From IMG/VR virus record IMGVR_UViG_3300048008_000449, positions 62,001 through 126,000 of that record: a stretch of DNA of 64,000 nt. One strand, written 5' to 3'. Below are positions 25,028 through 55,989 of the stretch, piece by piece; position 1 is the stretch's first letter, and each line of letters starts with the position of its first letter. The notes under the pieces are model-generated. The model had not been told where the DNA came from. It saw only the letters and a list, made by a program, of their open reading frames with translations, and searched no databases. Made by a program: the position numbers and the translations under genes.

Positions 25028-25633
25028 TCAATTTCGCAATTCTTTATACTGGATAACTGTTTCAATTCTAATATTAAGATCATCGCTATGTGATAGTTTA
25101 AACAACATCATTGTTTCTTCACTGTTGCAAAACACAATTGGAACACTTTCTCTATTTCTATGCATAAAGTATCTAATGTGTACTATACGTCTATCATGGA
25201 AATCAAAGTTATCATATATCCATTTTATAGTAGCATTGTCTTTTTCTAGTGTACCAACACCATACTTTGGCCAACTTATTAGTTTATGTTTGTAGTTGTT
25301 ATACCATAACTTATCACGTATAACAACACTTCTATCTTTTTCGTATAATAGTTTTTTATGTGTATCACTTATTGGTTCGTGTATTTTATCTATTTTTCTA
25401 TATAAGAAATCATCAGATTTTATCTGATCAACCATATCAACGTCAGATGTATAAACTGCTAAATTATATGTTGTTTCTGATTTTTTTGTTTTAACACCAC
25501 GCCATATTGTTTGACCATCTAATCCTATTTTAGGATAATTGAAAACGTAGTTAAACGGCAGGTCTAGAAATTTAATACATGTATCAAAGTATCTGTAATA
25601 TAATGACTGCGATGGAAATACATTATTTTCCAT
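25028..25633 (-). CDS. Hypothetical protein
   Basis: Start re-called at MENNVF, overlapping the clpA stop. Confidence 0.6.
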   Translation of the reverse strand: MENNVFPSQSLYYRYFDTCIKFLDLPFNYVFNYPKIGLDGQTIWRGVKTKKSETTYNLAVYTSDVDMVDQIKSDDFLYRKIDKIHEPISDTHKKLLYEKDRSVVIRDKLWYNNYKHKLISWPKYGVGTLEKDNATIKWIYDNFDFHDRRIVHIRYFMHRNRESVPIVFCNSEETMMLFKLSHSDDLNIRIETVIQYKELRN

Positions 25634-27887
25634 TAATAAGTAACTTGTCTTTTTGCCAATCAAGCTCCAATGTAAACTCGCCTTCATTATTAAGTAGATA
25701 TTTTGCTAATGGTAATTTTACTGATTCGTTGATTACTCGTTGTAGTGGTCTTGCACCCATTGTAGGATCGTACCCTTTATCTTCTAGCATGGCTAATAAT
25801 CCTGGTCCCCACTGTAATACAATATTTCTACCTTCAACATATGATTCTAATTCTCCTAAGAACTTAATAACAATACGTTTCATATCATTTTGCTCTAGTG
25901 CGTTAAATTTAACAATTCCATCTAATCTATTTCTAAACTCTGGAGCAAAGTAATTGTTTACTGCATCATCAACTGCTTTTGCATTAAATGTTTCTTCGTT
26001 GAATCCAATTGTAGCAATTGCCGCATCTTTTGCACCTAGGTTACTAGTCATAATAATAATTGCATTTTTAGCACTTACTACTTTACCTGTACTGCTCGTA
26101 AGTGTACCTTCATCAAGTAAACTTAACAATACACTCATTAAGTCAGGGTGTGCTTTTTCTACTTCATCTAATAACAATAAGCAATTTGGATTATCTTCTA
26201 GATGACTTATTAGTAAGCCATCTCCTGCTTTACCATCACCATGTCCTACATAGCCTGGAGGTGATCCAATTAGTTTTGATACTGTATGACGTTCTTGATA
26301 TTCTGCCATATCATAACGTACAAGTTTCATACTCATTGCTTGTGCTAGACGTTTAGCAAGTTCTGTTTTACCAACACCTGTTGGACCCGTAAACAAATAA
26401 CTAGCAACAGGTTTAGTAGGATCTTTTAATCCAGCCATGCTAACTGTAATACTATCTACTACACGATCAACTGCTGGTTGTTGTCCAAATACTGTACTTT
26501 CTAAAAATGTTTTAACTTCTGTATGTTTTGTTACAGTCTGTTTATCTTCTACGTTACCTAAATGTTCTTTTGGTATTCCTGTAAGTCTTGCTACCTCTGC
26601 TCTAATTTCTTCTTCGCCTATAATAGTTAAGCGATCTGCTTCTGGTAAAATTCTATTAAATGCACATGCTCTATCAAGTATATCAAATGCTTTGTCTGGT
26701 AATTTCTTGTTAAAGATATATTGGTCACTTAGTTCAACTGCTAATTCTGCGGCATCTTCAGTAATACTAACATTGTGATAATGTTCATAAGATATCATTG
26801 TACCTCTAACTACTTCTTTTGCCTCAATTATATTAGGCTCATCACATACAACTTTTGTAAACCTACGTGCCAATGCACTTTCTTTTTCAAATACTTTTCT
26901 ATATTCTTCGTCTGTTGTAGCACCAATAACTTTTAGTTTTCCACTACTCAATGCAGGCTTTAACATATTACCAGCATCCATAGTACCATTTGTACTACCT
27001 GCTCCAATAATTTGATGTATCTCATCAATGAATAAAATAATGTTAGGCTCTTTAATTAATGCTTCGCCTAATTGTTTCATACGTTCTTCAAAGTCACCTC
27101 TATATTTGGTACCAGCAACTAACTTAGTCATATCTAATTCCCATACAACCTTGTCTTTAATAATGTCTGGAACGTTACCTTCTACAATAAGTTTTGCTAA
27201 TCCTTGTACAACTGCTGTTTTACCAACACCACTTCCACCTGTTAAAATAGCATTAGATTTTTTCTTACGTGCTACTGTTTGTACTAGGTCTTTTAATTCT
27301 TTTCTACGGCCAATTAAATCATCATAATCTTGGCTTTCTTCATTTAAATTATTACAAAATTGTTTTAATACTTCACGTGGAGTTACTGCTCTCTGACCGC
27401 CTGGTCCTGGCATACCTGCAGCCATACCATCTACTGGTCCAAAGATTTGTTCATCTTTCATTGCGGCTGTATCTTGCATCCAACTCATTACTTTGTTTTT
27501 GTTTAGGCCCAATTGTTCTGCATATTTAGATGACACACTATGTTCTTCACCTAGTATACTCAATACTAAGTCAAGTTGGTTAATTACTTTTTTGCCTTGA
27601 AACAATGCTTGTGTTAACGCACGATTAAATACACGTTCTAACATTTGTGTCTTAGCAGGATTTGGTTCTTCTTTAGTATTTTTTACTAATTCTTTACATT
27701 CTTTTTCTAAGTATTCAATTAATGCAATTTGCAAACTTTCTGCATCTGCATTAATTTCGTAACACATTGCTATTACATGTGGGTCGTCTAGAATCACTGC
27801 GGCTAAGTGTTCTATTGTAACATATTCGTGTTTGAACTTCTTAGCTAAGTTAATTGCTGTTATTACTATTTTTTCAATGTCTGTCAT
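25623..27887 (-). CDS. clpA: ATP-dependent Clp protease ATP-binding subunit ClpA
   Basis: Clp-N (HEYVTIEHL), two AAA+ modules (GVGKT/FIDEIH; GPTGVGKT/LLDEVEKAHP), IGF loop, no ClpB M-domain. Confidence 0.93.
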   Translation of the reverse strand: MTDIEKIVITAINLAKKFKHEYVTIEHLAAVILDDPHVIAMCYEINADAESLQIALIEYLEKECKELVKNTKEEPNPAKTQMLERVFNRALTQALFQGKKVINQLDLVLSILGEEHSVSSKYAEQLGLNKNKVMSWMQDTAAMKDEQIFGPVDGMAAGMPGPGGQRAVTPREVLKQFCNNLNEESQDYDDLIGRRKELKDLVQTVARKKKSNAILTGGSGVGKTAVVQGLAKLIVEGNVPDIIKDKVVWELDMTKLVAGTKYRGDFEERMKQLGEALIKEPNIILFIDEIHQIIGAGSTNGTMDAGNMLKPALSSGKLKVIGATTDEEYRKVFEKESALARRFTKVVCDEPNIIEAKEVVRGTMISYEHYHNVSITEDAAELAVELSDQYIFNKKLPDKAFDILDRACAFNRILPEADRLTIIGEEEIRAEVARLTGIPKEHLGNVEDKQTVTKHTEVKTFLESTVFGQQPAVDRVVDSITVSMAGLKDPTKPVASYLFTGPTGVGKTELAKRLAQAMSMKLVRYDMAEYQERHTVSKLIGSPPGYVGHGDGKAGDGLLISHLEDNPNCLLLLDEVEKAHPDLMSVLLSLLDEGTLTSSTGKVVSAKNAIIIMTSNLGAKDAAIATIGFNEETFNAKAVDDAVNNYFAPEFRNRLDGIVKFNALEQNDMKRIVIKFLGELESYVEGRNIVLQWGPGLLAMLEDKGYDPTMGARPLQRVINESVKLPLAKYLLNNEGEFTLELDWQKDKLLINGK

Positions 27888-28557
27888 CTTTTAGCCTTTT
27901 TATAAAATCGTTAATATTAGATTCAGTTATGTGAGGTATCTTTACACTAATGTTTACTCTTAAACTTCCTCTCTTCTTTGTCTTTCTGTTATACAATCCC
28001 TGACCCTTAACACTAATAATAGTTCCTGTTTCTGTTTCAGGGGGAATATTTAATTCGCAGTAATCACCTAATGGTGTTAATATAACAAATGAATTCCTTT
28101 TCATTACATCTATTATATCTAATGTTTTATACATTATAATATTATTTCCTTGTCTTGTAAAGACTTTATCTGCCAATTCTTTAACATTTATTATGTATTT
28201 TTTGCCTTTATTAACAACATTAAACTTATCGCCTGCTACTGCTCCTGGGGGAATATTTACTTTTATGAATAATTCTTCTTCGTCTTCTACTTCTATATAA
28301 TTATTTATACCTAAAATTTGTTGTTCAATTGATAATCCAATATTAAACATCTTAGTATCAGACACTTTTACAATAGGTACATGTTTCTGCTCAGAAATAG
28401 TATCATATGCTTGACTAATTTCTAACCATTCAGCGATTGTACCGCCTTTGTCTGGATGATTTTTTAATGCTAATTTCTTATAGGCTTGCTTTACTTCTCT
28501 TAGTGAGGCGTTGGGTTCTACTCCTAAAATAAACCAAGGGTTATTGTAAGTCTTCAT
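27874..28557 (-). CDS. DnaJ-class co-chaperone (CbpA-like, no zinc finger)
   Basis: J-domain with HPD and a DnaJ C-terminal domain (KGQGL). Confidence 0.85.
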   Translation of the reverse strand: MKTYNNPWFILGVEPNASLREVKQAYKKLALKNHPDKGGTIAEWLEISQAYDTISEQKHVPIVKVSDTKMFNIGLSIEQQILGINNYIEVEDEEELFIKVNIPPGAVAGDKFNVVNKGKKYIINVKELADKVFTRQGNNIIMYKTLDIIDVMKRNSFVILTPLGDYCELNIPPETETGTIISVKGQGLYNRKTKKRGSLRVNISVKIPHITESNINDFIKRLKDDRH

Positions 28558-29312: not shown

Positions 29313-29335
29313 AATATTACTTATACCTTTGACAA

Positions 29336-32703: not shown

Positions 32704-33441
32704 TCAATCGGGAATTTTAATGCCATCAAACAGTATATCAGAATAGGTTGTTACTAGTTCTCTCCAGTTTGGCAATGGCGGGGAATTTATAATATCGCAT
32801 AATCTATAATATTCCATAGGTTTGTGCCTAAAGATTTCTCCAATATCAATTTTGTGTATTGCAATACCTTTGGCTTCAAATTCCATTTTATAATGGATAT
32901 ATTCTTCGTAATGATCTTTAAACTTTAATGGCTGTGCAAGATGAAATGTATCTGGAGCAATTGTTCTTTCATATGGTAAATTATGATCAGTTCCTACACA
33001 TATGGCAAACATATCTGCTAGTTCTTCTTGATCACAATCAAGTACAATATGTGTTGTTACATTAGTATCTTTATTATGTATAATATCAAATCTAGACAAT
33101 GCATAATTTAAGTAATGATATGGATTAAGTCTAAACACAAGTTTTGTAAAATCACCTACTCCTTGTCTTAGTGCCGCTTCAATTTGGTCATCAAATGGAT
33201 GTACTTCATTTATCCACTTATCACCAAATTTATTTTCACAATGAAATGTTTCAGGTCTCCAACTTCTACCTTGATGTCCTATCATATCTGTACCAGTAGG
33301 ATTTTCTTTTCTCATATCCATGTCAGGTACTTGTGCAAATCCTTCATGTCTTTGAATTAACCAAGAGATAAATTCACCTGGTAATCCTGAAGGATGTATT
33401 ATTGAAAATGCTTCTGGTTTTGGTCTTTCTAAAATAGGCAT
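32704..33441 (-). CDS. Hypothetical protein
   Basis: 245 aa, overlaps the radical SAM stop. Confidence 0.65.
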   Translation of the reverse strand: MPILERPKPEAFSIIHPSGLPGEFISWLIQRHEGFAQVPDMDMRKENPTGTDMIGHQGRSWRPETFHCENKFGDKWINEVHPFDDQIEAALRQGVGDFTKLVFRLNPYHYLNYALSRFDIIHNKDTNVTTHIVLDCDQEELADMFAICVGTDHNLPYERTIAPDTFHLAQPLKFKDHYEEYIHYKMEFEAKGIAIHKIDIGEIFRHKPMEYYRLCDIINSPPLPNWRELVTTYSDILFDGIKIPD

Positions 33442-38398: not shown

Positions 38399-38399
38399 A

Positions 38400-38977: not shown

Positions 38978-39054
38978 TGGTACTCCCGGTAGGATTCGAA
39001 CCTACGATCGACCCGTTATGAGCGGGTGGCATTAGACCGCTATGCTACAAGAGT
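38978..39054 (-). tRNA. tRNA with CAT anticodon, probably tRNA-Ile2 (lysidine type); Met not excluded
   Basis: Cloverleaf; anticodon arm ACCCG-CTCATAA-CGGGT; GGTTCGAATCC; encoded CCA. Confidence 0.85.
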
Positions 39055-39058
39055 ATTC

Positions 39059-39144
39059 TGGTGCCTCCTCCCGGACTCGAACCGGGACGCCATTATGGCC
39101 ACAGATTTTAAGTCTGTTATGTCTACCTATTCCATCAAGGAGGC
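39059..39144 (-). tRNA. tRNA-Leu(TAA)
   Basis: Long variable arm; ACAGA-CTTAAAA-TCTGT; encoded CCA. Confidence 0.95.
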
Positions 39145-39149
39145 TAAAT

Positions 39150-39226
39150 TGGCCTGCTCTACAGGATTCGAACCTGTGACCTACTGCTTAGAAGGCAGTT
39201 GCTCTATCCAGCTGAGCTAAGAGCAG
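39150..39226 (-). tRNA. tRNA-Arg(TCT)
   Basis: ACTGC-CTTCTAA-GCAGT; encoded CCA. Confidence 0.95.
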
Positions 39227-41823: not shown

Positions 41824-41900
41824 TGGCGGACCCGAGAGGATTCGAACCTCTGACCTCCTGTTTCGTAGACAGGCATTCTATCCAGCTGAACTACGGGTCC
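41824..41900 (-). tRNA. tRNA-Arg(ACG)
   Basis: CCTGT-CTACGAA-ACAGG; encoded CCA; upstream sigma70-like promoter. Confidence 0.95.
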
Positions 41901-42594: not shown

Positions 42595-42614
42595 AAATGT
42601 TCCTTAATTTATAA

Positions 42615-42928
42615 AATGGTCCCATCTTCGTTAATGGAGGCACTTCTGTTGCCAGGTAGTACCCACCCCTACGTGCTTAGTTAAACTAAGCCGCTAATGC
42701 CATTTCTGGCGAATAATTGTCATTTGCAATTATAGTTTTTGTTCGCGGTAACGGCGCTTACATCCCGGTAACTCCACTCATCTATCCTAACAGTCGATCC
42801 TAGTTCAGCCCCATCAAAAACACACTTACAAGCAGTGATTCAATATCTCATCTATAAATGTGTTTATGGTGGAGCTGCTCGGTACTGCCCCGAGGTCCTG
42901 TCTAGTCGTCAAATCGCTTCAACGTTAC
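42615..42928 (-). ncRNA. ssrA: Two-piece (circularly permuted) tmRNA, alphaproteobacterial type; tag (A)ANDNYSPEMALAA
   Basis: Acceptor piece ...GGGGCAGTACCGAGCAGCTCCACCA (CCA at 42867), hairpin spacer, GGGGCTGAACTAGGATCGAC starting 42812 (G3:U70), tag ORF 42727-42686; TATAAATA at 42935-42942; outer ends approximate. Confidence 0.93.
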
Positions 42929-42951
42929 AAGTTATATTTATACACTCTTGT

Positions 42952-43458
42952 TTATGTTTTGTCAACCTTTTTAAAGACATATTCAAAATTTTGTGTATTT
43001 GGATTATGTTGTACTAATTTTGCACCATTGCTAATATGAAAATGTGTAGCCATTGGTGTAAGTGGAGAAAGTGTAACCAAACGTTCAATATCATTTTTAT
43101 CTTTATAATAATCTTTTAGTTTAGCTACAATTTCTCTGCCAGCTCCTTTTTTACGTGACCATACTGTGTATGCAACTGCTATACTAGCATCATCAAGTAA
43201 ATTAGCATTCTGGCTTATAATGTTTAGTTCTCTTTCACTTTGTGGAATATCGTTACAATATGCAATGCATATAATACCTTGTATCTCATCATTGGCTTTT
43301 AGACCAAATATTTTTCTACCAAATGATGTTCTAAATTCCATATCTAAATTAGGCCTTACTGGATCTTCAGAACAATCTATGTCAGTTAGTTCAACTAGCT
43401 CACTAGATGATACCCACTTAAAGAAGTTATCAATTGAATCTTTAATTACTTTCAACAA
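42952..43458 (-). CDS. Hypothetical protein, GNAT-like
   Basis: YTVWS.KKGAGR, VTLSP...FHISNGA. Confidence 0.55.
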   Translation of the reverse strand: MLKVIKDSIDNFFKWVSSSELVELTDIDCSEDPVRPNLDMEFRTSFGRKIFGLKANDEIQGIICIAYCNDIPQSERELNIISQNANLLDDASIAVAYTVWSRKKGAGREIVAKLKDYYKDKNDIERLVTLSPLTPMATHFHISNGAKLVQHNPNTQNFEYVFKKVDKT

Positions 43459-43464
43459 TTACTC

Positions 43465-43998: not shown

Positions 43999-44093
43999 TG
44001 ATGTTCTCCTATAGTTAATCAATTGTCATAATTATAAGGTGTTTTTTACATAAAGTCAAGCATTTTTATAGTTTTTTAATAAATAGTTATAAT

Positions 44094-46108: not shown

Positions 46109-46187
46109 ACAACTATTTATGCGATTAAAACTATACTTTATTTTGGTTTATTAATAAACTCAAGTTCGTCATCAGTGTAAGGCCACA

Positions 46188-46660: not shown

Positions 46661-46662
46661 TG

Positions 46663-46866: not shown

Positions 46867-46884
46867 TTGTATTCTCCGTTATGT

Positions 46885-47090
46885 ATGTGGATGTTTTTGG
46901 GAAAGCATCCAATTGTTTTGCCAGTCTCTCCTGGCCGCTACCACTGCGCCTATGTTGCCACTGCGCCACTTGTAAGGCATGGGTTATGCCCTGGTCTTTC
47001 CCGAGTGCCACTCATTTTTTCTAAGCTGAGGTCGCTTTGTGCTACTTTGCACATGTAAATTACTGTACAACGTTGTACGGTTTTATTACA
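46885..47090 (-). ncRNA. Candidate structured RNA leader with hairpins and repeated AGTGG
   Basis: GC-rich non-coding island with at least 5 hairpins, downstream of TAAATA (47095-47100). Confidence 0.6.
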
Positions 47091-47179
47091 CATCTATTTA
47101 TCATTTAGACCGATAAAAAGTAAGTAAGTATTGTTGCACTATACGCATTTACGAATTGCGTGTAGAGCATGACTCAATA

Positions 47180-48304
47180 TCATTTAGTTGTTGTACTCTC
47201 ATAGGTACGATTAAACTGATTATGTACTGTTACAAATGTTGTACATTTACTGAGTTGTTTTAATTTTAATGCACCTGCATATGTGCAAGTACTGCGTAAT
47301 CCGCCTAGTAGATCTTGAATAGTACTTTCAACATGTCCACGATATGGAACAAGTACTTCTCTACCTTCACTACTACGATAATCTTTTAGGCCACCAAAGT
47401 GTTTTGTGTTTGCGGCATCACTGCTCATACCGTAAAACTGTACGAACTTCTTTTCTTGTACTTTATGTTTACGATTATTTAGATGCTCGCCAATTTCATA
47501 TTCTAATTCATTTGTTTCATAGAACTTTGTAATTACTTCGCCGCCGCCTTGATCATGCCCAGCAAGCATACCACCAAGCATAACAAAATCTGCTCCACCT
47601 GCAAAGGCCTTAGCGACATCGCCAGGGCAAGTACACCCACCGTCAGCAATAATGTGACCCCCAAGTCCATGGGCGGCATCTGCACACTCGATAACCGCAG
47701 ATAACTGCGGGTATCCAACACCAGTTTGTATCCTAGTAGTGCAAACAGAGCCGGGACCAATACCCACTTTAACAATATCAGCTCCACTTAAAATTAACTC
47801 CTCTGTCATTTCTCCGGTAACTACGTTACCTGCTATAATTACTAAGTCTGGAAATTGATCACGTACTTTACGAACACGTGCCGCAAAATGATCACTATAA
47901 CCATTAGCAATATCCATACATATATATTTTAATTGATTAGTATCTGCTTGTACACTAACTAACTTTAAAAAGTCAGCATCACTTGTACCAATACTCATAG
48001 CGACATTTTGTGCTCGTCTACTATCTGGGTAATCGTTATTAAAAAATTCTACAAGTTGTTCTGCTGAATAAGTCTTAACTAGGCAAGTAAAGATACCTTG
48101 TTGTGCAAGAGTGTCTGCCATTTCAAACGTACCAACACCATCCATGTTAGCGGCCATAATAGGAACACCTTCATATTCTGCTTTACTGTTTCTAAATTTA
48201 AACTTGCGTTCTAGCCTTACTTGTTTACGTGATACAAGTGTTGAACGTTTGGGACGAATCAATACATCACTATAATCTAGTTTTACTTCGTTTTCAATTC
48301 TCAT
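47180..48304 (-). CDS. guaC: GMP reductase
   Basis: [37 protein letters not shown]. Confidence 0.95.
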
Positions 48305-48710
48305 TATTACATACCCTTTTTCTTAAATCTGTTGTGCTAAATCTGTGATCTCTTTTATTAAAGTGTAACTCAATGCCACGCTTACGACATACATCTTTTC
48401 CAGTAAATTCTTTTTCTTTATATTCGTCGCCTAAGAATCTAACATCTAACTGAAACAGCTCTAATATATCAATTAAATCTTGTTCAGTTTGATATGGTAC
48501 AATCTCATCTACAAACTTTAATGCATTTAGTTGTGCATAACGTTCTACCATTGTTTGTATAGGCTTATTTTTTGTATCTGGACGATCAATAGTTGGATCA
48601 CTTTGCAATCCTACAATTAAAATATCACAGTTTGCTTTTGCTTCTCTGAGCATGCCTATATGACCTGCGTGTAACAAATCAAATGTACTACATGTAAATC
48701 CTATTCTCAT
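48294..48710 (-). CDS. Cytidylyltransferase (TagD-like, HIGH fold)
   Basis: [13 protein letters not shown]. Confidence 0.88.
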
Positions 48711-49276
48711 AATCCTAATACTCCATATGCTTCGTATGGCAACCAATGTGTATTCATTCTTTCAGGGTGCCAAAGTACTGTTATAATGTTATCTAGTTTC
48801 CAGCTCTCACAATTTCCATCTTCGTCTGTTGCTAATGTTGTTGCTCCATACGGTATACTACTTAATATTTCTTCGTGACGACTGTGAACTTTAATCTCAC
48901 TACCATTGTAGTATACATTATGATCTTGCTTGTGTCTACCATTTAGTGCGATTTTACCACCAAAACTCACGTTGAGGAATTGGCATCCTCTGCTGATTCC
49001 TAGTATAGGTTTATTATAGAGCTTTGCTAAATCTAACGTGTGCTTTTCTACTCTTAAACGGTTTTCATCATATTGCCAATTACCGGGTACCATACTGTTA
49101 CCACCTGTAAACACTACTAGATCGCTTTTAACCACAATGTCTGTTTGGTAGTGTTCTAAGTTATTTGGAATTGGTCTTAATGTGTGTCCAGAGAACATGT
49201 CATAGAATCCGTGATCTAAGCTGTCGTATGGACCGTTTCGAAAGTCAATCACACGTTGCGTGATTGCTATTTTCAT
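48707..49276 (-). CDS. Class I glutamine amidotransferase-like protein (Cj1417-like) with Ser at the nucleophile position
   Basis: IAITQR, TGGN, LGISRG, WHPE. Confidence 0.8.
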   Translation of the reverse strand: MKIAITQRVIDFRNGPYDSLDHGFYDMFSGHTLRPIPNNLEHYQTDIVVKSDLVVFTGGNSMVPGNWQYDENRLRVEKHTLDLAKLYNKPILGISRGCQFLNVSFGGKIALNGRHKQDHNVYYNGSEIKVHSRHEEILSSIPYGATTLATDEDGNCESWKLDNIITVLWHPERMNTHWLPYEAYGVLGL

Positions 49277-49281
49277 TTATT

Positions 49282-49584
49282 TTATTCTGTTTTTTCTAAT
49301 GTGACTTCTAATGGAAAACCATTTCGTCTAGATTCTGTAATAGCTTCAACACATTTCTGTTCAGCTACTTCATAACTATATGTGCCTGCAATACCTCGGC
49401 CTTTTTCGTGGACCTCAAGCATCACTGACTTTGCTTCGTCTAATGTTTTATTAAAAGTTTGTTGTAAAACAATAACTACAAAGTCTTGCGGAGTGCTTTC
49501 GTCATTAAGTATGATCACATTAAACTTAGGTGGACTACTTAATTTAGTGATTTCTGCTACTTCGTCTTGTGATGCTTGTGCCAT
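49282..49584 (-). CDS. clpS: Clp protease adaptor ClpS
   Basis: VIILNDESTPQDFV, MLEVHEKG, EVAEQK, FPL. Confidence 0.92.
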   Translation of the reverse strand: MAQASQDEVAEITKLSSPPKFNVIILNDESTPQDFVVIVLQQTFNKTLDEAKSVMLEVHEKGRGIAGTYSYEVAEQKCVEAITESRRNGFPLEVTLEKTE

Positions 49585-49594
49585 GTTTTACCTT

Positions 49595-50020
49595 TTAATC
49601 TATGTTAATTGTTCTTGGTTTCTTTTCGTCTGGAATATTCTGTTCCAATGTAACTACTAAGATTCCGTTATCTAGTTTAGAAGATGTTACTTCTACATAA
49701 TCAGCTAAACTAAATTCTCTATTAAAGTTTCTAGTTCCAATGCCTTTGTGTAAGTATTCAACTTCATTATCGCTTTCTTTTTTTTCTGCTGAAATTGACA
49801 ATGTGTTTCCATCTTGTTTAATTGTTAGTTCGTCTTTATCAAACCCTGCAACTGCTAAACTAATCGTATAGCTATTATCGCTTTCCTTTACAATATTGTA
49901 TGGGGGATAACCACCTGTTACGTTAGCTGAAAATGCATGTTGCATATCATCAAACATCTTATCAAAGCCTATAGTAGCTTTATAAAAGTCTGGTAGGTTT
50001 AATGTTGTTAATCTAGTCAT
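49595..50020 (-). CDS. Small heat-shock protein Hsp20 (IbpA-like)
   Basis: IGFD, YPPYNI, LAVAGF, YLHKGI, PRTINI. Confidence 0.95.
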   Translation of the reverse strand: MTRLTTLNLPDFYKATIGFDKMFDDMQHAFSANVTGGYPPYNIVKESDNSYTISLAVAGFDKDELTIKQDGNTLSISAEKKESDNEVEYLHKGIGTRNFNREFSLADYVEVTSSKLDNGILVVTLEQNIPDEKKPRTINID

Positions 50021-50100
50021 AATTGTTCTCCTTTGTTAAGCAAGATTATTTAGAACCCTTTCGGCGTTCTATGTATATAGAAATCAGTTCTATTATACAT
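50021..50100 (-). promoter_or_regulatory. ROSE-like RNA thermometer
   Basis: TCTTGCTT-AACA-AAGGAGA hairpin with a bulged G over the SD, plus two upstream hairpins. Confidence 0.7.
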
Positions 50101-50131
50101 TGTTATTTATGCACATCTGTGCAAAAATTCT

Positions 50132-50380
50132 TTAATTATTTGTATACTTGTCTTTAGCAATACGTCTACGATGTCTAGCACGTCCTGCCGCTTCTGCTTT
50201 AAGTCTTTTTTCCGTATTACTTATAAAGTGTTTACGGTCACGAACTTCTTGCATAATACCATCTTTAGCAATCATCTTTTTTAATCTTCTCATTGCTTGT
50301 TCAACGTTATTATTTCTAACTTCAACTGTTAATCCGTTTCCGCCTTTTCTGTCTCTGTCTCTGTGATTATTATTTGCCAT
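50132..50380 (-). CDS. rpsU: 30S ribosomal protein bS21
   Basis: VEVRNNNVEQAMRRLKK...G...EVRDRKHF. Confidence 0.9.
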   Translation of the reverse strand: MANNNHRDRDRKGGNGLTVEVRNNNVEQAMRRLKKMIAKDGIMQEVRDRKHFISNTEKRLKAEAAGRARHRRRIAKDKYTNN

Positions 50381-50383
50381 AAT

Positions 50384-50905
50384 TTATATTTTCCCGGTTA
50401 CCCTGTTATTTTGTGATGATATCTGCTCGTACTCTACTTCTAATAAGTATGCAAACGTATTTAGCAACTCTTTTGCCATGTCTTGTTTACCACGTTCTCT
50501 ACCTCTTAATAAAACAGTAACCATTAGTTTATTATTTTTTTCCAAAAACTTACGAGCCATTCTGGCCTTTGTTTCTAAATCATGTGTATCAATATTTAGA
50601 CCCATGCGTATTTCTTTGGTCTCAACAACGCTCTCTCGTTGCTTTTTCTTTGCCAGTTTTTCTTTTTGTTTTAACGAGTACAAGTGCTTATTAAGATCAG
50701 TTATTTTGCATACAGGTGGTGTTGCTTTATCTGCAACTAGTATCAAATCTAACCCTAATGACCTGGCCTCTTTTAAAGCATCTGTTGTTGACATGATCTG
50801 GCTTTCCATATCATCACCTGATACCCTAATTTGTTTATGTCTTATCTTCTCGTTGGAAATAACAAAAGGTTTTTCCTCACGTCTTTTATAATTTCTATTC
50901 TGCAT
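50384..50905 (-). CDS. infC: Translation initiation factor IF-3
   Basis: NEKIR, LDLILV...PPVCKI, KEIRM...IDTHDL..K, RGRE; ATG start at MQNR with SD. Confidence 0.9.
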   Translation of the reverse strand: MQNRNYKRREEKPFVISNEKIRHKQIRVSGDDMESQIMSTTDALKEARSLGLDLILVADKATPPVCKITDLNKHLYSLKQKEKLAKKKQRESVVETKEIRMGLNIDTHDLETKARMARKFLEKNNKLMVTVLLRGRERGKQDMAKELLNTFAYLLEVEYEQISSQNNRVTGKI

Positions 50906-52109
50906 TGTCACCTTTAATATATTGTGGCTGTGCGTTTCTAGAAATAACTTGTTCATTTATAATAATTTTTCGTATTCCTTGCTCGTATAATTCAGGTAAG
51001 TTATATTGTGTTTCTAATAATGAAGCATCTAATATCTTACGTAAACCTCTAGCTCCTATTTCTTCTTTAATTGCAATGTCTGCAACTTCTTCTAATGCTT
51101 TTATTGTAAACTCTATTTGTATTTTGTCAAGTAGAAAAAGCTCTTTTATTTGATCTACAATACTATCTGTGGGTTCAGTTAGTATTTTTACAAGATCGTT
51201 CTTATTTAAGGGGCTAAGGACGTTTACAGACGGTAATCTACCCACAAATTCGGGTATAAGTCCATATTTCACTAAATCACGTGTTTGTAAGTGCTTTTCC
51301 CACTGTTCTATATCGGTGTCTAAATCGTCGTTAAATCCTATCTTCGACTTACCTAGGCGATTAACCACAACATCTTGTAGACCTACAAAGGCTCCACCTA
51401 CTACAAATAGTATCTCACTGGTGTCAATATCTACTTTCTCCGGGTTATGTTGCGGTTTGTTCGGAACCGTTACTACTATACCTTCCATGAGCTTTAAAAG
51501 GCTCTGTTGGACACCTTCTCCAGATACGTCTCTACTCAAACTAACATAGTCATTACGTTTAGCTTTCTTATCAATTTCGTCAACATATATAATTCCATGT
51601 TGTGCTGATTCTATATCATAGTTAGCGGCTTGAAACAATTTGTGTATTAGTACTTCTGAGTCATCACCTGCATAACCGCTTTCAGTTATTGTTGTTGCAT
51701 CAGTTACTACCATTGGAACATTAAGCAATTTAGCAAGTGTTTGTGCCATTAGTGTTTTACCAGTTCCTGTAGGACCAGCAATTAATACATTACTTTTTTG
51801 TAGCTTGGTTTTTGTTTTAGAAGTTATTCTTTTATAGTGATTATATACTGCTACACTTAAAGTCTTTTTTGCATGATCTTGACTGATAACATTCTCATCT
51901 AAAAATTTATGAATTGCTCTTGGCGTTGGAAGAACTGTTTTCTTTTGCAATGCGTCAGATACTTTAACTTTGTCATTCTTAACTATACTATAACAAAATT
52001 CAACACACCCACTACAAATATGGATATTGTTTTCTCCTGCTAATAGTTTAGTTATTTGTGTAGTGTCTTTACCACAAAAATTACAATGAGGTAAATTACT
52101 TTTCATCAA
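50895..52109 (-). CDS. clpX: ATP-dependent Clp protease ATP-binding subunit ClpX
   Basis: C4 zinc domain, GPTGTGKT, YVDEIDK, RDVSGEGVQQ, IGF, GARGLR. Confidence 0.95.
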   Translation of the reverse strand: MMKSNLPHCNFCGKDTTQITKLLAGENNIHICSGCVEFCYSIVKNDKVKVSDALQKKTVLPTPRAIHKFLDENVISQDHAKKTLSVAVYNHYKRITSKTKTKLQKSNVLIAGPTGTGKTLMAQTLAKLLNVPMVVTDATTITESGYAGDDSEVLIHKLFQAANYDIESAQHGIIYVDEIDKKAKRNDYVSLSRDVSGEGVQQSLLKLMEGIVVTVPNKPQHNPEKVDIDTSEILFVVGGAFVGLQDVVVNRLGKSKIGFNDDLDTDIEQWEKHLQTRDLVKYGLIPEFVGRLPSVNVLSPLNKNDLVKILTEPTDSIVDQIKELFLLDKIQIEFTIKALEEVADIAIKEEIGARGLRKILDASLLETQYNLPELYEQGIRKIIINEQVISRNAQPQYIKGDNAE

Positions 52110-52545
52110 AATACTCTGGATTCATTTGCAACCTTACAAAATTATTAATATCATCTATAGAACGTACAACTAGGTTAGTTCCTGTAGCATTTATTAATTT
52201 TACAGTTTCCCTTCTCTTGTACTTATCACTATAAAATAGCACCGTATTCTCAGTTTTTTGTGATTTTAAAAGTGCCGCCATAATGTCTTCCCATGCACAA
52301 GTATCTACATCAACTATCATAAAGTCACATGTATTAGATACATTCCATACCCACGGTAATGTAGCTGACGTTGTTTTTTTATTTTGTACAAAAAATACTA
52401 CACTTGTAGCAATGTATTTTTCAAACAATTCTTTTATATCTGTTATTAATATTTCATTAGTGCTAGAAATACATATTCCTATTCCATGTTCCGTTAACAT
52501 CAAATCTGGAGCTGTTACAGTGTAACTATCATTATCAATTGTCAT
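52096..52545 (-). CDS. Hypothetical protein
   Basis: 149 aa, overlaps both neighbours. Confidence 0.65.
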   Translation of the reverse strand: MTIDNDSYTVTAPDLMLTEHGIGICISSTNEILITDIKELFEKYIATSVVFFVQNKKTTSATLPWVWNVSNTCDFMIVDVDTCAWEDIMAALLKSQKTENTVLFYSDKYKRRETVKLINATGTNLVVRSIDDINNFVRLQMNPEYFDEK

Positions 52546-54232
52546 TATTAGTATCTTTGATCATTTCTTTGTATACTTGTGTAAGAACTGTCTGGTCAGC
52601 TCTTGATATTAATTCTTTTAATTCTAGTGATGCATCGTCAGCAAAAATATCTTCAATTTTCTTTTTAATAACACCTTCAGTTTGTAAATGTCCACTTCCT
52701 GGCCAACTTCCTGTGCTACGCATTTCTGCTACTATCTTAGTCACTAGTTCTTGTTTGTCTTTTTTTAATGTCTTTTTTGACTTATTATTTAGATCGTATT
52801 GTTGTGCATCTAGTAGATATTCTCTGCGACCTTTTTCGTTAATAGTATATTCCTTACCTTCTTTGTCTATGAAAACTTCTACTTCTTTTGCAGGAACTTC
52901 ATCTTGTACAACAGGCTCGGGGCTAATCGTTTCGTCTTCTTTATCACTAGTATCATCTTCTTCAATGCTGGGTCGATCTTCGTTGTCTCCCATTTCATCT
53001 TCTTGTGTTTCTTCATATATTGTATTTATTTCGGTCTTGCTAGGCCTGGGAAACCTTTCTACTAACGTTATACCTGATATAACAAGTACAATAGCTAGTG
53101 GGTCAAAAACCAAAACAAGTAATAATATGACAAATCTAACTGCATCTTCTAACATGCTTCTAGTAGGATCTGATCCATATATTAGTTCAGCAATATATTT
53201 AACAGGACCAACTTCTGCTTCTAATGCTCTGCTTTGTCCTTCTAGTTCAAATTTTTGTTCATATAAACCATCTAGTGTTGCAGTGGCATCAGTAATAATA
53301 CTACGTTGTGTTAGTATCTGGTCTGTGCTATCGTCTTGCTGTCCTTGTCCAAGTTGGGCTCTAAGTCTAGTAATTAATTCATTCGAATCAGCAATTTGTT
53401 GTTCTGCTAATGCTCGTAATCTTTTAATTTCTGTTCTAGCATCTTTGATAACTTGATCATCATTGTTGTCTCTAATTTTATTTAACTGAAAAATAGCTAC
53501 CTGTCTATCTTTAGTTTTAGTTTCTCTAAAATCTTTAACTGCTTTTGCAGTTTTAGAACCATATCTTCCGTCTTGAGATGCTCCTATTAATCCTTGTAGC
53601 TTTTTAATTTCTTCATTAGCAATATACTGCTCAATAAGTTTTAATTGATTATCAATACTTTCAATTTGATTTTTAAAAGGTAATTCTGCTACTTTTGATT
53701 CTTCTTTTAATTCTTTAATAATTTCATTTTGTTCATCAATAGATGGTTGCACACCTTTATATGCATTTTCAATTCTAGTTGTTTCTTCACGTATTTTTTG
53801 CTGTAGTTCATCATCAATAGATGTATCTAACGTTTCAAGTTTAATAATTTTATCATCAGCTTTTTGTATTACTGTTTTCTCTCTAGCAATACTTGTATCA
53901 ATACGTTCTATAAGAGCGACATTCTCAGTGGCAAGGCTTGTTTGTTCTATGTGTGCTTTTGAAAGAAACCCAAATATACCCATGCTTGTAATAAACATAA
54001 GTAACACCACTGCCACTGAGAGATATGTCTTAATAAGTATGGGTGCCTGTCGCCAATGTAAATGTAACCACACTGCAGACGTTAGTTTACCAATTTCTAG
54101 TACGGTACCCATAATAATAATTGGTACTATGGCACTGGCAAAAATTGCAACAAGACCAACAATGCTGTAGTAGGCCGCCACTGCACTGATTGATAATGCT
54201 ACTAGAATTGTCCAATAACCAAAATACCTCAT
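52535..54232 (-). CDS. Membrane protein: 3 N-terminal TMs, long coiled coil with an embedded PG-binding-like motif, C-terminal TM and acidic tail
   Basis: TSMGIFGFLSKAH, EVGPVKY, VFDPLA; LQGLIG..DGRYGSKT..AV. Confidence 0.7.
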   Translation of the reverse strand: MRYFGYWTILVALSISAVAAYYSIVGLVAIFASAIVPIIIMGTVLEIGKLTSAVWLHLHWRQAPILIKTYLSVAVVLLMFITSMGIFGFLSKAHIEQTSLATENVALIERIDTSIAREKTVIQKADDKIIKLETLDTSIDDELQQKIREETTRIENAYKGVQPSIDEQNEIIKELKEESKVAELPFKNQIESIDNQLKLIEQYIANEEIKKLQGLIGASQDGRYGSKTAKAVKDFRETKTKDRQVAIFQLNKIRDNNDDQVIKDARTEIKRLRALAEQQIADSNELITRLRAQLGQGQQDDSTDQILTQRSIITDATATLDGLYEQKFELEGQSRALEAEVGPVKYIAELIYGSDPTRSMLEDAVRFVILLLVLVFDPLAIVLVISGITLVERFPRPSKTEINTIYEETQEDEMGDNEDRPSIEEDDTSDKEDETISPEPVVQDEVPAKEVEVFIDKEGKEYTINEKGRREYLLDAQQYDLNNKSKKTLKKDKQELVTKIVAEMRSTGSWPGSGHLQTEGVIKKKIEDIFADDASLELKELISRADQTVLTQVYKEMIKDTNNDN

Positions 54233-54234
54233 TA

Positions 54235-54588
54235 TTATTTTCCTATGTTGTAACGAATAGCATGGCCTTCTGTGACCAATAATTCGTTAATGTTAATTTC
54301 ATTATTTTTTTCATCTCGGATTTTGATTGTTCCAAGGATACGACCATACTTTCCTCTTTTGTTAAGGATAGTGGTAACTTCAAACTGTTTAGGTAAAAGA
54401 TCCATAAGTCGTTGTTTAGCATCTAAGCCTTTTTGTTTTACAACAATGTCACTTGATCTGCTATCTGGAGTATCCACTCCGTAAAGTTTTAAACGTTGTT
54501 TAATACATAAATCAAAACCTAGATCAATTTCTAAGTCTAATGTATCACCGTTAATAACTCTAATTAATTTTGCGTTGTATGTATACAT
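54235..54588 (-). CDS. Thermonuclease (SNase)-family protein
   Basis: VINGDT, RL.GVDTP, KYGRILG, LVTEGHA. Confidence 0.8.
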   Translation of the reverse strand: MYTYNAKLIRVINGDTLDLEIDLGFDLCIKQRLKLYGVDTPDSRSSDIVVKQKGLDAKQRLMDLLPKQFEVTTILNKRGKYGRILGTIKIRDEKNNEININELLVTEGHAIRYNIGK

Positions 54589-54663
54589 AAAAATCTTTCA
54601 CATTCTTTAAACAGCTATACTTAAACTGTATAGTATTTATTGTTATATTGTTTAGTTAATATA

Positions 54664-55353
54664 CTATGTTTTGCTATAATTAGCAAGCCATAATTTTGCC
54701 GCTCTACCGGTTGGTGGTTTTGATAGAAATTTACGGATTTCTCTGTATACTTGATCAAAATTTTCTTTTCGATCTGGATCTTCCAAACCTCCACTATTGT
54801 CTACTACGTGGAAATTAGCCGCTCCAAAAACCTGTTGAAACTTCATGATATTTTCTTGTACTTTTTGCCACATCATTGAAACAATGTCATTGCTTAATCT
54901 ACGTTGTCTTGATTGATTACGTTCTTGTGCAACGGATTCACTTGTGTTAACAAATAGCATCATAGTTGTATATCCTAATTTTTGTAACTGTTTAGTAGTC
55001 TCAGAAACCTTTTGTACATTCTTTCCTGTACCGTCAATAATTAATCCAAGACGTCCATCTAAATACAATCCTTCTTTTGTCTTTGTAATCTCTTTAGCAC
55101 GATTGCGAAGTTCTTGTCCTTGATCACTACTAATTGCATCAGGATCAGACAAATCAAAGTTATGTTTGTTTGCCAAGTATTCGTATGCATCATCACTGTT
55201 AATAGATTTTAATCCTGTTCCTGACAATAACTTGCCTGCCACATAGCTTTTGCCCGAGCCAGGACCACCTGCTAGGAACACCGCTTTAAATATGTGAGGA
55301 TCATTTGGACCTTCTAGTACTTGCTCACGTTCTAATATATCATGTATTTTCAT
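54664..55353 (-). CDS. P-loop kinase (zeta-toxin/PNK-like) with capsid-targeting-like N-terminus
   Basis: GGPGSGKS, INSD, IIDGTG, RNQSR.R; MKIHDILE; start 5 nt after TAAATA (55359-55364). Confidence 0.8.
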   Translation of the reverse strand: MKIHDILEREQVLEGPNDPHIFKAVFLAGGPGSGKSYVAGKLLSGTGLKSINSDDAYEYLANKHNFDLSDPDAISSDQGQELRNRAKEITKTKEGLYLDGRLGLIIDGTGKNVQKVSETTKQLQKLGYTTMMLFVNTSESVAQERNQSRQRRLSNDIVSMMWQKVQENIMKFQQVFGAANFHVVDNSGGLEDPDRKENFDQVYREIRKFLSKPPTGRAAKLWLANYSKT

Positions 55354-55401
55354 ACTTGTATTTATTAAAATAATACAATATATATTATATAGTGATAAAG
55401 A

Positions 55402-55989
55402 TTATACTTTTCTTGTAACAACTTTGTCAGCCAAACCAAAATCTACTGCTTCTTGAGCAGACATAAAATTATCACGTTCCATTGCATCTTCTAGTTGAGC
55501 AAATGTTTTGCCAGCTGAATTATGATGCACATAAGCCTGTGTTAGTTGTTGCTTCATCTTAAGAATTTCTTTAACTTGAATTTCCATATCAGTTGCCTGT
55601 CCACCTGCACCACCGCTTGGTTGGTGAATCATTGTACGACTGTTAGGCAACACAAAACGTTTACCCGGTTCTCCTGCCATTGCAAGGAAACTGCCCATGC
55701 TACATGCTTGACCCATAACAATTGTACTTACTGGAGATTTAATAAATTGCATTGTATCATAGATTCCTAAGCCTGCTGTAACTACTCCGCCTGGGCTGTT
55801 AATATAAAAATTAATAGTTTCGCTACTATTTTGTGATTCTAAAAATAGCATTTGTGCAACAATTAAGTTTGCACTGTGATCATTAACATCACTTGTAAGC
55901 ATTACGATACGATCTTTTAGCAAACGACTATAAATGTCATATGCACGTTCGCCTCTGCCTGTACTTTCGATTACTGTTGGTATTATCAT
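55402..55989 (-). CDS. clpP: ATP-dependent Clp protease proteolytic subunit
   Basis: DIYSRLL, YINSPGG, ACSMG, MIHQP, RDNFM. Confidence 0.97.

What the first reader, a model, noticed from the sequence alone, without database searches (positions are those of the whole stretch)
25623..55989. Self-contained proteolysis and chaperone network: ClpA, ClpS, ClpX, ClpP, DnaJ, Hsp20 and a matching tmRNA tag
Seen: both ClpP-partner ATPases with IGF loops, the N-degron adaptor, the peptidase, and a tmRNA whose tag ends in LAA. Established: ClpX recognises C-terminal LAA, ClpS delivers N-degron substrates to ClpAP, and in Alphaproteobacteria ClpXP and ClpAP control cell-cycle regulators. Inference: the phage installs its own tag-to-degradation pathway, possibly with altered specificity towards host defence or cell-cycle proteins.
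Basis: partly seen in the sequence, partly recalled or inferred. Interest (0 to 1): 0.66.

Follow-up and report, generated by a model that had tools for sequence, protein, structure and literature searches.

The report
Marine jumbo phage Clp protease module
A large marine phage carries working-looking copies of the bacterial Clp protein-degradation machinery, small chaperones and a ribosome-rescue RNA; cultured relatives carry a similar set, it still depends on host parts, and its ClpX has an altered substrate-recognition pore.

Summary
ClpA, a J-domain protein, ClpS, Hsp20, ClpX, ClpP and a permuted alpha-type tmRNA (tag ANDNYSPEMALAA) are all present, with catalytic and docking motifs intact and dN/dS of 0.03-0.28.

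The contig is not a host-phage chimera. It is a 205-kb fragment of a marine jumbo phage. Its terminase, DnaJ-ClpA adjacency and ClpX-IF3 adjacency match the cultured phages Atu_ph07 and Phosso (the terminase also PA5oct), whose Clp sets are already published. About 50 independent viral contigs keep the same gene order.

"Self-contained" is wrong. No SmpB, DnaK or SspB was found in this record or its relatives, so the tmRNA and the J-protein must use host partners.

"Matching tag" is doubtful. Every ClpX of this marine clade has GYAG instead of GYVG in the pore-1 loop and a shortened loop without RKH. In E. coli these are the elements that read the LAA end of the ssrA tag. The tag's A-[L/I/M]-A-A end is nevertheless conserved across the lineage (K-L-A-A in two clade B records), so host ClpXP or phage ClpAP may be what reads it.

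This is a new member of a known kind, with a derived ClpX worth testing.

The parts
25623..27887 (-). ClpA, a double-ring AAA+ unfoldase of 754 aa, with N-domain, D1 KYRGDFE, D2 GYVG and an IGF ClpP-docking loop
   Evidence: Pfam AAA_2, AAA, AAA_lid_9, ClpB_D2-small and Clp_N. 543 bits to E. coli ClpA, with the IGL loop aligned to IGF. 62-88% identical orthologues in 14 related viral records, plus a 44% match in one clade B record. Motifs conserved in 12 relatives.
27874..28557 (-). J-domain co-chaperone of 227 aa, with HPD motif and DnaJ_C domain but no zinc finger. It overlaps the start of clpA.
   Evidence: Pfam DnaJ and DnaJ_C. The sequence shows KNHPDKGG. It lies directly upstream of clpA in 12 relatives and in Atu_ph07.
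38978..39226 (-). tRNA cluster: Met(cat), Leu(taa), Arg(tct)
   Evidence: ARAGORN and Rfam tRNA.
41824..41900 (-). tRNA-Arg(acg), which accompanies the tmRNA in relatives
   Evidence: ARAGORN.
42595..42979 (-). Two-piece (permuted) alpha-type tmRNA with tag peptide ANDNYSPEMALAA
   Evidence: ARAGORN. Rfam RF01849 at 123 bits and RF04321 at 111 bits. Present in 20 of 37 related viral records, with the tag end conserved.
49282..49584 (-). ClpS, the N-degron adaptor, 100 aa. Its pocket reads LNDESTPQ, with Gln at the gatekeeper Met position.
   Evidence: Pfam ClpS at 93.5 bits. The best solved relative is Caulobacter ClpS 3dnj. Pocket variation across the clade is shown.
49595..50020 (-). Small heat-shock protein (Hsp20/alpha-crystallin), 141 aa
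   Evidence: Pfam HSP20 at 73.8 bits. Its position is conserved in relatives.
50132..50380 (-). Ribosomal protein S21, part of the conserved module
   Evidence: Pfam Ribosomal_S21. Synteny. Phosso has S21 downstream of ClpX-IF3.
50384..50956 (-). Translation initiation factor IF3, directly downstream of clpX
   Evidence: Pfam IF3_N and IF3_C. ClpX-IF3 adjacency is also seen in Phosso, Atu_ph07 and AP-J-162.
50895..52109 (-). ClpX, 404 aa, with zinc finger, Walker A and B motifs, IGF loop, a GYAG pore-1 loop and a shortened loop lacking RKH
   Evidence: Pfam. Alignment to E. coli ClpX 8e91. Clade-wide motif table. Trees.
52096..52545 (-). p149, a conserved protein whose gene overlaps the clpX start. 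It has a CheY/receiver-like alpha/beta fold. It is a candidate regulator or adaptor, which is a hypothesis only.
   Evidence: Present in every clade A locus that reaches this position. AF2 pLDDT 78. Structural matches of Z about 10 to receiver domains. dN/dS 0.05-0.10.
52535..54232 (-). p565, a membrane protein with N-terminal transmembrane helices, conserved upstream of clpX in clades A and B
   Evidence: No Pfam family.
54235..55353 (-). SNase-like nuclease (54235-54588) and a zeta-toxin/AAA_33-type kinase (54664-55353), lying between clpP and clpX in conserved order
   Evidence: Pfam. Synteny.
55402..55989 (-). ClpP peptidase, 195 aa, with Ser-His-Asp triad and no propeptide
   Evidence: Pfam CLP_protease at 264 bits. 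Alignment to E. coli 1tyf. 66.8% identical to Phosso and 63% to Atu_ph07. Tree.

Best explanation
The window is part of a marine jumbo phage, estimated at about 365 kb from CheckV's 56% for 205 kb. The phage belongs to the T4-derived supergroup that holds PA5oct, Atu_ph07 and Phosso.

What the lineage carries. It has long carried, and selection still maintains, a proteostasis and translation-support set: ClpP, the unfoldases ClpX and ClpA, the adaptor ClpS, a J-protein, a small heat-shock protein, a tmRNA, IF3, S21 and tRNAs.

Likely working (inferred):
- During a long infection the phage tmRNA, charged and delivered by host AlaRS, EF-Tu and SmpB, frees stalled ribosomes and tags the stalled products with ...EMALAA.
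- Phage ClpAP with ClpS, and phage ClpXP, degrade or remodel selected proteins.
- The J-protein recruits host DnaK, and Hsp20 holds unfolded proteins.

The system is a hybrid of phage and host parts, not self-contained.

The ClpX of this marine clade is a derived form. It has GYAG in the pore-1 loop, no RKH, sits on a long stem branch, and has a receiver-fold gene overlapping its start. This predicts that its substrate choice has moved away from the classical recognition of ssrA-type C-terminal tags. Tagged proteins would then more likely be cleared by host ClpXP or phage ClpAP.
For: Phage origin:
- IMG/VR virus record with uniform GC of 0.32-0.40.
- TerL is present and is most similar to PA5oct (55.6%), Phosso (50.9%) and Atu_ph07 (48.8%).
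- Near-identical DNA occurs in seawater metagenomes from 13 studies, 8 of them flagged as possible sources of this DNA, and in a viral-fraction metagenome.

Inheritance within the lineage:
- The order ClpP-kinase-SNase-p565-p149-ClpX-IF3-S21-Hsp20-ClpS is kept in about 50 viral contigs, with ClpX identity from 100% down to 49%. The core ClpX-IF3-S21-Hsp20-ClpS is kept down to 45%.
- DnaJ-ClpA and ClpX-IF3 adjacency is shared with Atu_ph07, and ClpX-IF3 adjacency with Phosso.
- No bacterial species representative has a ClpX more than 50% identical.
- All 28 phage ClpX rows separate from 35 bacterial rows at SH-aLRT 98.
- Phage ClpPs form a clade at 98.

Function:
- Motifs are intact.
- dN/dS is 0.03-0.28.
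- RNA-library contigs identical to the window cover the 3' part of ClpX through ClpS at greater depth than the flanks.

Host dependence: no SmpB, no Hsp70, no SspB.

Derived ClpX:
- GYAG and loss of RKH are seen in all 33 distinct clade A sequences and in none of 113 others.
- V154 and R228/H230 are among the residues that read the ssrA tag. V154F and R228A raise KM at least 50-fold, and R228A shifts specificity (PMC7652416).

Tag conservation: 16 of 18 ARAGORN-called tags across the lineage end in A-[L/I/M]-A-A and two identical clade B tags end in K-L-A-A, so all end in [L/I/M]-A-A.
Against: - No biochemistry exists for any phage Clp protein in the papers searched, so every statement about substrates is inference.
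- V154A is not the tested V154F. A conserved Lys in the shortened loop (VPNK) could replace R228. T199S and V202 in the pore-2 loop are near-canonical. Recognition of the tag by the phage ClpX therefore cannot be excluded.
- The record is about 56% complete, so SmpB or DnaK could lie on the missing part. However, none was found in 37 related records or in the two complete cultured genomes.
- RNA contigs cannot show strand or transcript ends, and DNA can be present in RNA libraries.
- The PA5oct ClpP gene carries a mass-spectrometry note from a study of virion-associated proteins. This fits a role in particle assembly instead.
Confidence: 0.7

Rival explanations
1. The phage installs a closed tag-to-degradation pathway of its own: the phage tmRNA adds an LAA tag that the phage ClpX reads and the phage ClpP degrades.
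For: The tag ends in LAA, and this end is conserved across the lineage together with ClpX and ClpP. ClpX keeps Y153, V202, the IGF loop and the zinc finger. Clade B relatives with a canonical GYVG and RKH ClpX carry similar tags, so the pairing may be ancestral.
Against: In this clade the pore-1 Val and the RKH motif are lost. These are elements E. coli ClpX uses to read the tag. No SmpB or SspB is encoded, so the pathway is not closed. Host ClpXP and phage ClpAP can also read such tags, which is established for E. coli ClpA.
Confidence: 0.25
2. The Clp proteins serve mainly in virion assembly or phage DNA replication, by remodelling or maturing phage proteins. This has been suggested for Atu_ph07 and for jumbo phages in general. 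They would not be aimed at the host proteome.
For: Attai 2018 and Iyer 2021 propose assembly and replication roles. In Atu_ph07 and Phosso clpX lies beside topoisomerase genes. The PA5oct ClpP gene carries an ESI-MS/MS note, and that study's mass spectrometry was done on virion-associated proteins.
Against: A separate ClpP-fold protease, more likely the prohead protease, lies elsewhere in the genome at C1:31442-31909. In this clade clpX sits among translation and chaperone genes, not structural or topoisomerase genes. ClpS and a tmRNA have no obvious role in assembly.
Confidence: 0.15
3. The stretch is host DNA, arising from a host-phage chimera, a mis-binned bacterial contig, or a very recent capture of host genes.
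For: All the genes are typical bacterial housekeeping genes. The tmRNA is of the alphaproteobacterial type. One related record is classed as a provirus.
Against: GC is uniform across 205 kb and a terminase lies on the same contig. The same order occurs in about 50 independent viral contigs and in cultured phages. It is present in a viral-fraction metagenome. Bacterial ClpX is at most 50% identical and bacterial ClpP at most 64%. The tmRNA shows only weak DNA similarity, 74% or less over 100-190 nt, to 400 alphaproteobacterial genomes.
Confidence: 0.02

Closest known systems
Agrobacterium phage Atu_ph07 (Polybotosvirus) and Sinorhizobium phages Phosso and AP-J-162
   Same: They are jumbo phages of Alphaproteobacteria that encode ClpX, ClpA, ClpP and ClpS. 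Atu_ph07 has a J-protein directly upstream of clpA, and IF3 lies directly downstream of clpX in all three. AP-J-162 also has DnaJ, Hsp20 and a tmRNA, and Phosso has S21 and a tmRNA. TerL is 49-51% identical. ClpX and ClpP group with the window's proteins in the trees.
   Different: They come from soil and fresh water, have higher GC (37-47%) and genomes of 470-490 kb. Their ClpX keeps GYVG. Atu_ph07 also has ClpB and no alpha-type tmRNA by Rfam, while this record has no ClpB. Their clpX lies beside topoisomerase genes. No clear p149 homologue was found.
Pseudomonas phage PA5oct group and Rak2-like jumbo phages
   Same: They have the closest terminase (55.6%). They encode ClpA, ClpS and ClpP. 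PA5oct ClpP falls inside the phage ClpP clade.
   Different: No PA5oct record appeared among the listed ClpX matches. Their hosts are Gammaproteobacteria.
Bacterial ClpXP/ClpAPS with tmRNA-SmpB (E. coli, Caulobacter)
   Same: The phage proteins share the domain architectures, catalytic residues, ClpP-docking loops and zinc finger. The tag is of the ANDN...LAA type. ClpS is closest to Caulobacter ClpS.
   Different: ClpX has GYAG, lacks RKH and has a loop 3 residues shorter. The ClpS gatekeeper Met is Gln. There is no SmpB, SspB or DnaK. clpP and clpX are not adjacent. The genes lie in a phage genome.
Huge-phage translation genes (Al-Shayeb et al. 2020)
   Same: That work reports tmRNA, IF3, S21 and tRNAs in phage genomes above 200 kb.
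   Different: That survey reports SmpB in some huge phages, whereas none was found in this lineage. The main text does not mention Clp genes (0 occurrences).

Membership tests
ClpX (AAA+ unfoldase partner of ClpP) | N-terminal C4 zinc-binding domain | tested here: met
   Pfam zf-C4_ClpX. C9, C12, C32 and C35 are invariant in 22 clade sequences.
ClpX (AAA+ unfoldase partner of ClpP) | Walker A and B motifs, arginine finger and sensor-2 | tested here: met
   GPTGTGKT, VDEIDK, GRLP and GARGLR are aligned to E. coli ClpX.
ClpX (AAA+ unfoldase partner of ClpP) | IGF loop for docking on ClpP | tested here: met
   SKIGFND aligns to E. coli SGIGFGA and is conserved in the clade.
ClpX (AAA+ unfoldase partner of ClpP) | GYVG pore-1 loop | tested here: not met
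   GYAG is found in all 33 distinct clade A sequences, and GYVG in all 113 others compared.
ClpX (AAA+ unfoldase partner of ClpP) | RKH loop, the specificity element of bacterial ClpX | tested here: not met
   The phage has VPNKPQHNPEKVDIDT where E. coli has VPPQGGRKHPQQEFLQVDT, so its loop is 3 residues shorter and has no RKH.
ClpA | N-domain plus two AAA+ modules, with D1 KYR and D2 GYVG pore loops and an IGL/IGF loop | tested here: met
   Pfam. Full-length alignment to E. coli ClpA at 543 bits. Motif table.
ClpP (S14 peptidase) | Ser-His-Asp triad in a full-length ClpP fold | tested here: met
   GQACSMG, MIHQP and ERDNF align to S97, H122 and D171 of 1tyf. Pfam score 264 bits.
ClpS | ClpS core with the N-degron pocket residues (Asn, Asp, Thr, His) | tested here: met
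   LNDESTPQ...VHEKG against Caulobacter LNDDYTPM...VHQNG. These residues are conserved in the clade.
ClpS | Gatekeeper Met (Caulobacter M53), which limits the pocket to Phe, Leu, Trp and Tyr | tested here: not met
   It is Gln in this phage. In clade A it is Gln or Met, with one Val, and in clade B mostly Phe or Met, with one Val.
tmRNA, alphaproteobacterial two-piece type | Match to the covariance model above the curated cut-off, and a tag reading frame with a stop | tested here: met
   RF01849 at 123 bits against 50, and RF04321 at 111 bits against 47. ARAGORN reports a permuted tmRNA with a tag.
tmRNA-SmpB system | SmpB partner encoded alongside the tmRNA | tested here: not met
   No SmpB was found in this record, in 37 related records, or in the complete Phosso and Atu_ph07 genomes.
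tmRNA-SmpB system | Alanine charging identity (G-U pair in the acceptor stem) | not tested
   The acceptor stem of the two-piece RNA was not dissected.
DnaJ (class I Hsp40) | J-domain with the HPD motif | tested here: met
   Pfam DnaJ. KNHPDKGG is present.
DnaJ (class I Hsp40) | Cys-rich zinc-finger domain | tested here: not met
   Only the DnaJ and DnaJ_C domains were found, in a protein of 227 aa. It is a J-protein, not a full DnaJ.
Atu_ph07/Phosso/PA5oct-like jumbo phages | Related terminase and shared local gene order (DnaJ-ClpA, ClpX-IF3) | tested here: met
CpdR/RssB-type receiver-domain ClpX adaptor (considered for p149) | Receiver (CheY-like) fold with an Asp at the end of strand 3 | tested here: inconclusive
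   The fold matches have Z of 9-10.6, but the same is true of TIR and deoxyribosyltransferase folds. D79 is invariant, but there is no acidic pair after strand 1.
CpdR/RssB-type receiver-domain ClpX adaptor (considered for p149) | Binds ClpX | tested here: inconclusive
   The complex prediction gave no answer.

The most novel reading that the evidence does not exclude
In this abundant marine jumbo-phage clade, ClpX has been rebuilt into a phage-specific unfoldase: Val to Ala in the pore-1 loop, RKH loop lost, a long stem branch. It would no longer read ssrA-type tags. Instead, perhaps guided by the receiver-fold protein p149 whose gene overlaps its start, it would pick particular host or phage proteins. 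The conserved phage tmRNA tag would hand stalled products to host ClpXP or phage ClpAP. That would be a division of labour between viral and host AAA+ proteases not described before.
Probability: 0.2. Interest if true: 0.7.

Novelty: new member of a known kind. Interest (0 to 1): 0.45.

Why it matters
Phage-encoded Clp sets have been listed in genome papers, but no functional study turned up in the papers searched. This clade is widespread in seawater and offers a natural experiment. One phage lineage contains both canonical ClpX (GYVG with RKH) and a derived ClpX (GYAG without RKH), alongside the same conserved tmRNA tag. Comparing the two forms in vitro would show whether the pore loops alone set tag recognition, and what a virus gains by bringing its own unfoldases. 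It also shows that large phages extend host proteostasis and ribosome rescue rather than replace them, because they lack SmpB and DnaK.

Tried and rejected
- Complex prediction of ClpX with p149: no answer, score 0.00. This is no evidence either way.
- Profile comparison of p149 with the protein upstream of clpX in Phosso: hhalign E 0.16, not significant. BLASTP found only a 23-residue stretch.
- ESM Atlas look-up of p149: no informative cluster.
- Pfam at E up to 1 for p149, p565 and the proteins flanking clpA: nothing credible.
- Promoter and terminator scan of 42000-57500: promoter-like sites were no more frequent than in shuffles, and terminator-like sites not clearly more (12 against a mean of 7.1, sd 3.1), so no operon boundaries could be drawn.
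- Host identification from the tmRNA: only weak DNA similarity to 400 alphaproteobacterial genomes. This fits a streamlined marine alphaproteobacterium but names no host.
- The Gp23 Pfam family gave no hit, but its control was also silent, so this says nothing.
- Rfam at a permissive threshold on 46300-47300, a stretch well covered in RNA libraries: no match.
- The AU test on the ClpP tree did not finish in time.

Full report
**What is there**

The window is 34% GC and is read almost entirely from the minus strand.
- ClpA at 25623-27887.
- A J-domain protein at 27874-28557.
- ClpS at 49282-49584.
- Hsp20 at 49595-50020.
- ClpX at 50895-52109.
- ClpP at 55402-55989.
- A permuted alpha-type tmRNA at 42595-42979, with tag ANDNYSPEMALAA.

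Residue-level alignments to solved structures show the following:
- The ClpP triad aligns with E. coli S97/H122/D171.
- Both ClpA AAA+ modules are intact, and IGF takes the place of the E. coli IGL loop.
- ClpX has the zinc finger, Walker motifs and IGF loop.
- The ClpS pocket residues are present.

Ribosomal protein S21 and IF3 lie between ClpX and Hsp20. Four tRNAs lie near the tmRNA.

**Phage, not host**

The window is bases 62001-126000 of a 204,772-base IMG/VR virus record that CheckV rates 56% complete.
- GC is uniform along the record.
- A large terminase lies on the same contig. It is most similar to those of PA5oct (55.6%), Phosso (50.9%) and Atu_ph07 (48.8%).
- Near-identical DNA is held in seawater metagenomes from 13 studies, 8 of which are flagged as possible sources of this very DNA, and in a viral-fraction metagenome.
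- A scan of IMG/VR with ClpX found 280 relatives. In about 50 contigs the order ClpP-kinase-SNase-p565-p149-ClpX-IF3-S21-Hsp20-ClpS is kept, while ClpX identity falls from 100% to 49% (clade A).
- A more distant set (clade B, 45-49% identity) keeps ClpX-IF3-S21-Hsp20-ClpS.
- ClpA with the J-protein directly upstream recurs in 12 relatives.
- Cultured phages share these adjacencies. Atu_ph07 has DnaJ-ClpA and ClpX-IF3, and Phosso has ClpX-IF3 followed further on by S21.

**Origin of the genes**

- Among one genome per bacterial species, no ClpX exceeds 50% identity, and the best hits are scattered across phyla.
- In a 63-row tree, all 28 phage ClpX rows (clades A and B, Atu_ph07, Phosso) stand on one side of a branch against 35 bacterial rows, with SH-aLRT 98. 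Clade A is a single group at 100, on a stem of 1.54 changes per site. The root is not known.
- Phage ClpPs, including that of PA5oct, form a clade at 98. One short contig from an Oceanospirillaceae MAG falls inside it. The next starred set (95) adds alphaproteobacterial ClpPs.

This pattern fits an old acquisition followed by vertical descent in the phage lineage. It does not fit a chimera or a recent capture.

**Are the genes active?**

- dN/dS against three relatives is 0.03-0.28 for every gene of the module.
- Two marine metatranscriptome libraries hold contigs identical to the window, of 2,515 and 2,042 nt. They span the 3' part of clpX, IF3, S21, Hsp20, ClpS and the start of the next gene. 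Their depths are 41 and 21, against 0-6 in most flanking bins (about 11 in the one beside the contig).
- Contigs cannot show strand or transcript ends, so this is supportive evidence only.

**Not self-contained**

- SmpB was not found in this record, in 37 related records, or in the complete Phosso and Atu_ph07 genomes, although Phosso carries a tmRNA.
- Hsp70/DnaK is absent from this record, from 14 relatives and from both complete genomes.
- SspB is absent from 15 records.
- Only ClpA and ClpX carry AAA_2 domains above the family cut-off, so there is no ClpB.

The tmRNA and the J-protein (HPD motif, no zinc finger) must therefore work with host SmpB and host DnaK.

**The tag and the ClpX pore**

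An alpha-type tmRNA is present in 20 of 37 related records. ARAGORN called a tag in 18 of them. Sixteen end in A-[L/I/M]-A-A, for example ANDNYSPEMALAA, ANNNYAPAMALAA, ANANYAPEMALAA and AEDNFAIAA. Two identical clade B tags end in K-L-A-A. All 18 therefore end in [L/I/M]-A-A, and this end is under constraint.

Five sampled alphaproteobacterial genomes have the tag ANDNEMALAA. Two of them are 1.4 Mb, with loci of 31-33% GC. The phage tag reads as that host-type tag with three added residues (YSP).

Against this, every clade A ClpX has GYAG in place of GYVG, and VPNKPQHNPEKVDIDT in place of VPPQGGRKHPQQEFLQVDT. All clade B, cultured-phage and bacterial sequences keep GYVG, and RKH or a near variant of it.

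In E. coli the residues Y153, V154, T199, V202, R228 and H230 contact the ssrA tag. V154F and R228A raise KM at least 50-fold, and R228A moves specificity towards an N-degron substrate. [quoted passage not shown]

The phage ClpX compares as follows:
- Kept: Y153 and V202.
- Changed: T199S and V154A.
- Lost: R228.
- Unstable: His at the H230 position, which is not conserved in the clade.

I infer that the phage ClpX has moved away from classical tag reading. I cannot show this. V154A is not the mutant that was tested, and a conserved Lys remains in the shortened loop.

**ClpS**

The pocket residues Asn, Asp, Thr and His are kept. The gatekeeper Met of Caulobacter ClpS is Gln here, and across the lineage it varies mainly between Gln, Met and Phe, with an occasional Val. 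This hints at a shifted N-degron range.

**Neighbouring genes**

- p149 overlaps the clpX start in every clade A locus that reaches that position. It folds with pLDDT 78 as a five-strand alpha/beta domain that is most like receiver domains (Z 9-10.6), with an invariant Asp at the end of strand 3.
- Receiver-domain proteins such as CpdR and RssB are known ClpX adaptors (my own knowledge). That makes p149 a candidate adaptor, but the fold is common and the complex prediction gave no answer.
- p565, a membrane protein, precedes clpX in both clades.
- The gene upstream of clpP has a 2OG-Fe(II) dioxygenase fold.

**Comparison with what is known**

- Attai et al. 2018 list ClpX, ClpA, ClpB, ClpP, ClpS and DnaJ in Atu_ph07.
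- The AP-J-162 paper reports six Clp genes, clpX beside IF-3, Hsp20, DnaJ and a tmRNA.
- Iyer et al. 2021 note ClpP, ClpS, ClpA and ClpX in jumbo phages.
- Al-Shayeb et al. 2020 report tmRNA, SmpB, IF3 and S21 in huge phages.
- No functional study of a phage Clp set turned up in the papers searched.

The gene set is therefore a known kind. The marine clade with its rebuilt ClpX pore did not turn up in the papers searched.

**Verdict**

It is not self-contained, and the claimed match between the tag and the phage ClpX is doubtful.

Noticed in passing
window 52096-52545 (-): A conserved 149-aa protein whose gene overlaps the clpX start. It has a receiver/CheY-like fold and an invariant Asp at the end of strand 3. 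It is found only in the clade whose ClpX has GYAG and lacks RKH.
   Followed up: yes
window 55998-56813 (-): The gene directly upstream of clpP folds with pLDDT 94.6 as a 2OG-Fe(II) dioxygenase, with invariant H189, D191, H245 and R258. It has no Pfam hit. It is conserved next to clpP in clade A.
   Followed up: yes
window 46439-47011 (-): Three small ORFs of 77, 67 and 54 aa lie between a DUF1127 gene and the IMPDH/GMP-reductase gene. They are strongly represented in four marine RNA libraries, with depth up to 94. No Rfam family matches.
   Followed up: partly
window 12751-14598 (-), 50132-50956 (-), and the tRNAs at 38978-39226 and 41824-41900: A translation-support set: a tRNA nucleotidyltransferase fused to a 5'-3' deoxyribonucleotidase-like domain, ribosomal protein S21, IF3 and four tRNAs. 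Five more tRNAs lie further along the contig.
   Followed up: partly
window 5027-7400, 17387-18301 and 33429-35949 (-): Five radical SAM genes in three places, two of them as tandem pairs. Their function is unknown.
   Followed up: no
window 7710-10967 (-): A 1085-aa ORF lies in a stretch with raised GC (0.42) and reversed GC skew, and a long overlapping ORF runs on the plus strand. Only its N-terminus matches a PHROG family of unknown function.
   Followed up: no
G000:C1:31442-32465 (outside the window): A second ClpP-fold protease (110 bits, partial profile match), probably the prohead protease. Next to it is a weak GroES-like match at 19.6 bits, just under the cut-off.
   Followed up: partly
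window 41998-42594 (-): A cyanophage-type outer-membrane beta-barrel protein (Phage_OMP) lies directly beside the tmRNA gene.
   Followed up: no
window 54235-55353 (-): A staphylococcal-nuclease-like gene and a zeta-toxin/AAA_33-type kinase gene are kept between clpP and clpX across clade A.
   Followed up: partly
L111 (Oceanospirillaceae MAG contig JAYQBD010000083.1, 9 kb): Its ClpP falls inside the phage ClpP clade next to PA5oct, whereas its ClpX groups with gammaproteobacterial ClpX. This may be a gene transfer or an artefact of a short protein.
   Followed up: no
L098 (G022) and L006 (Phosso): Rfam finds alpha-type tmRNA matches stretched over 543 and 690 nt, and ARAGORN calls no tmRNA there. 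These genes may carry an insertion.
   Followed up: no
It was therefore detected by mass spectrometry, in a study that analysed virion-associated proteins.
   Followed up: partly
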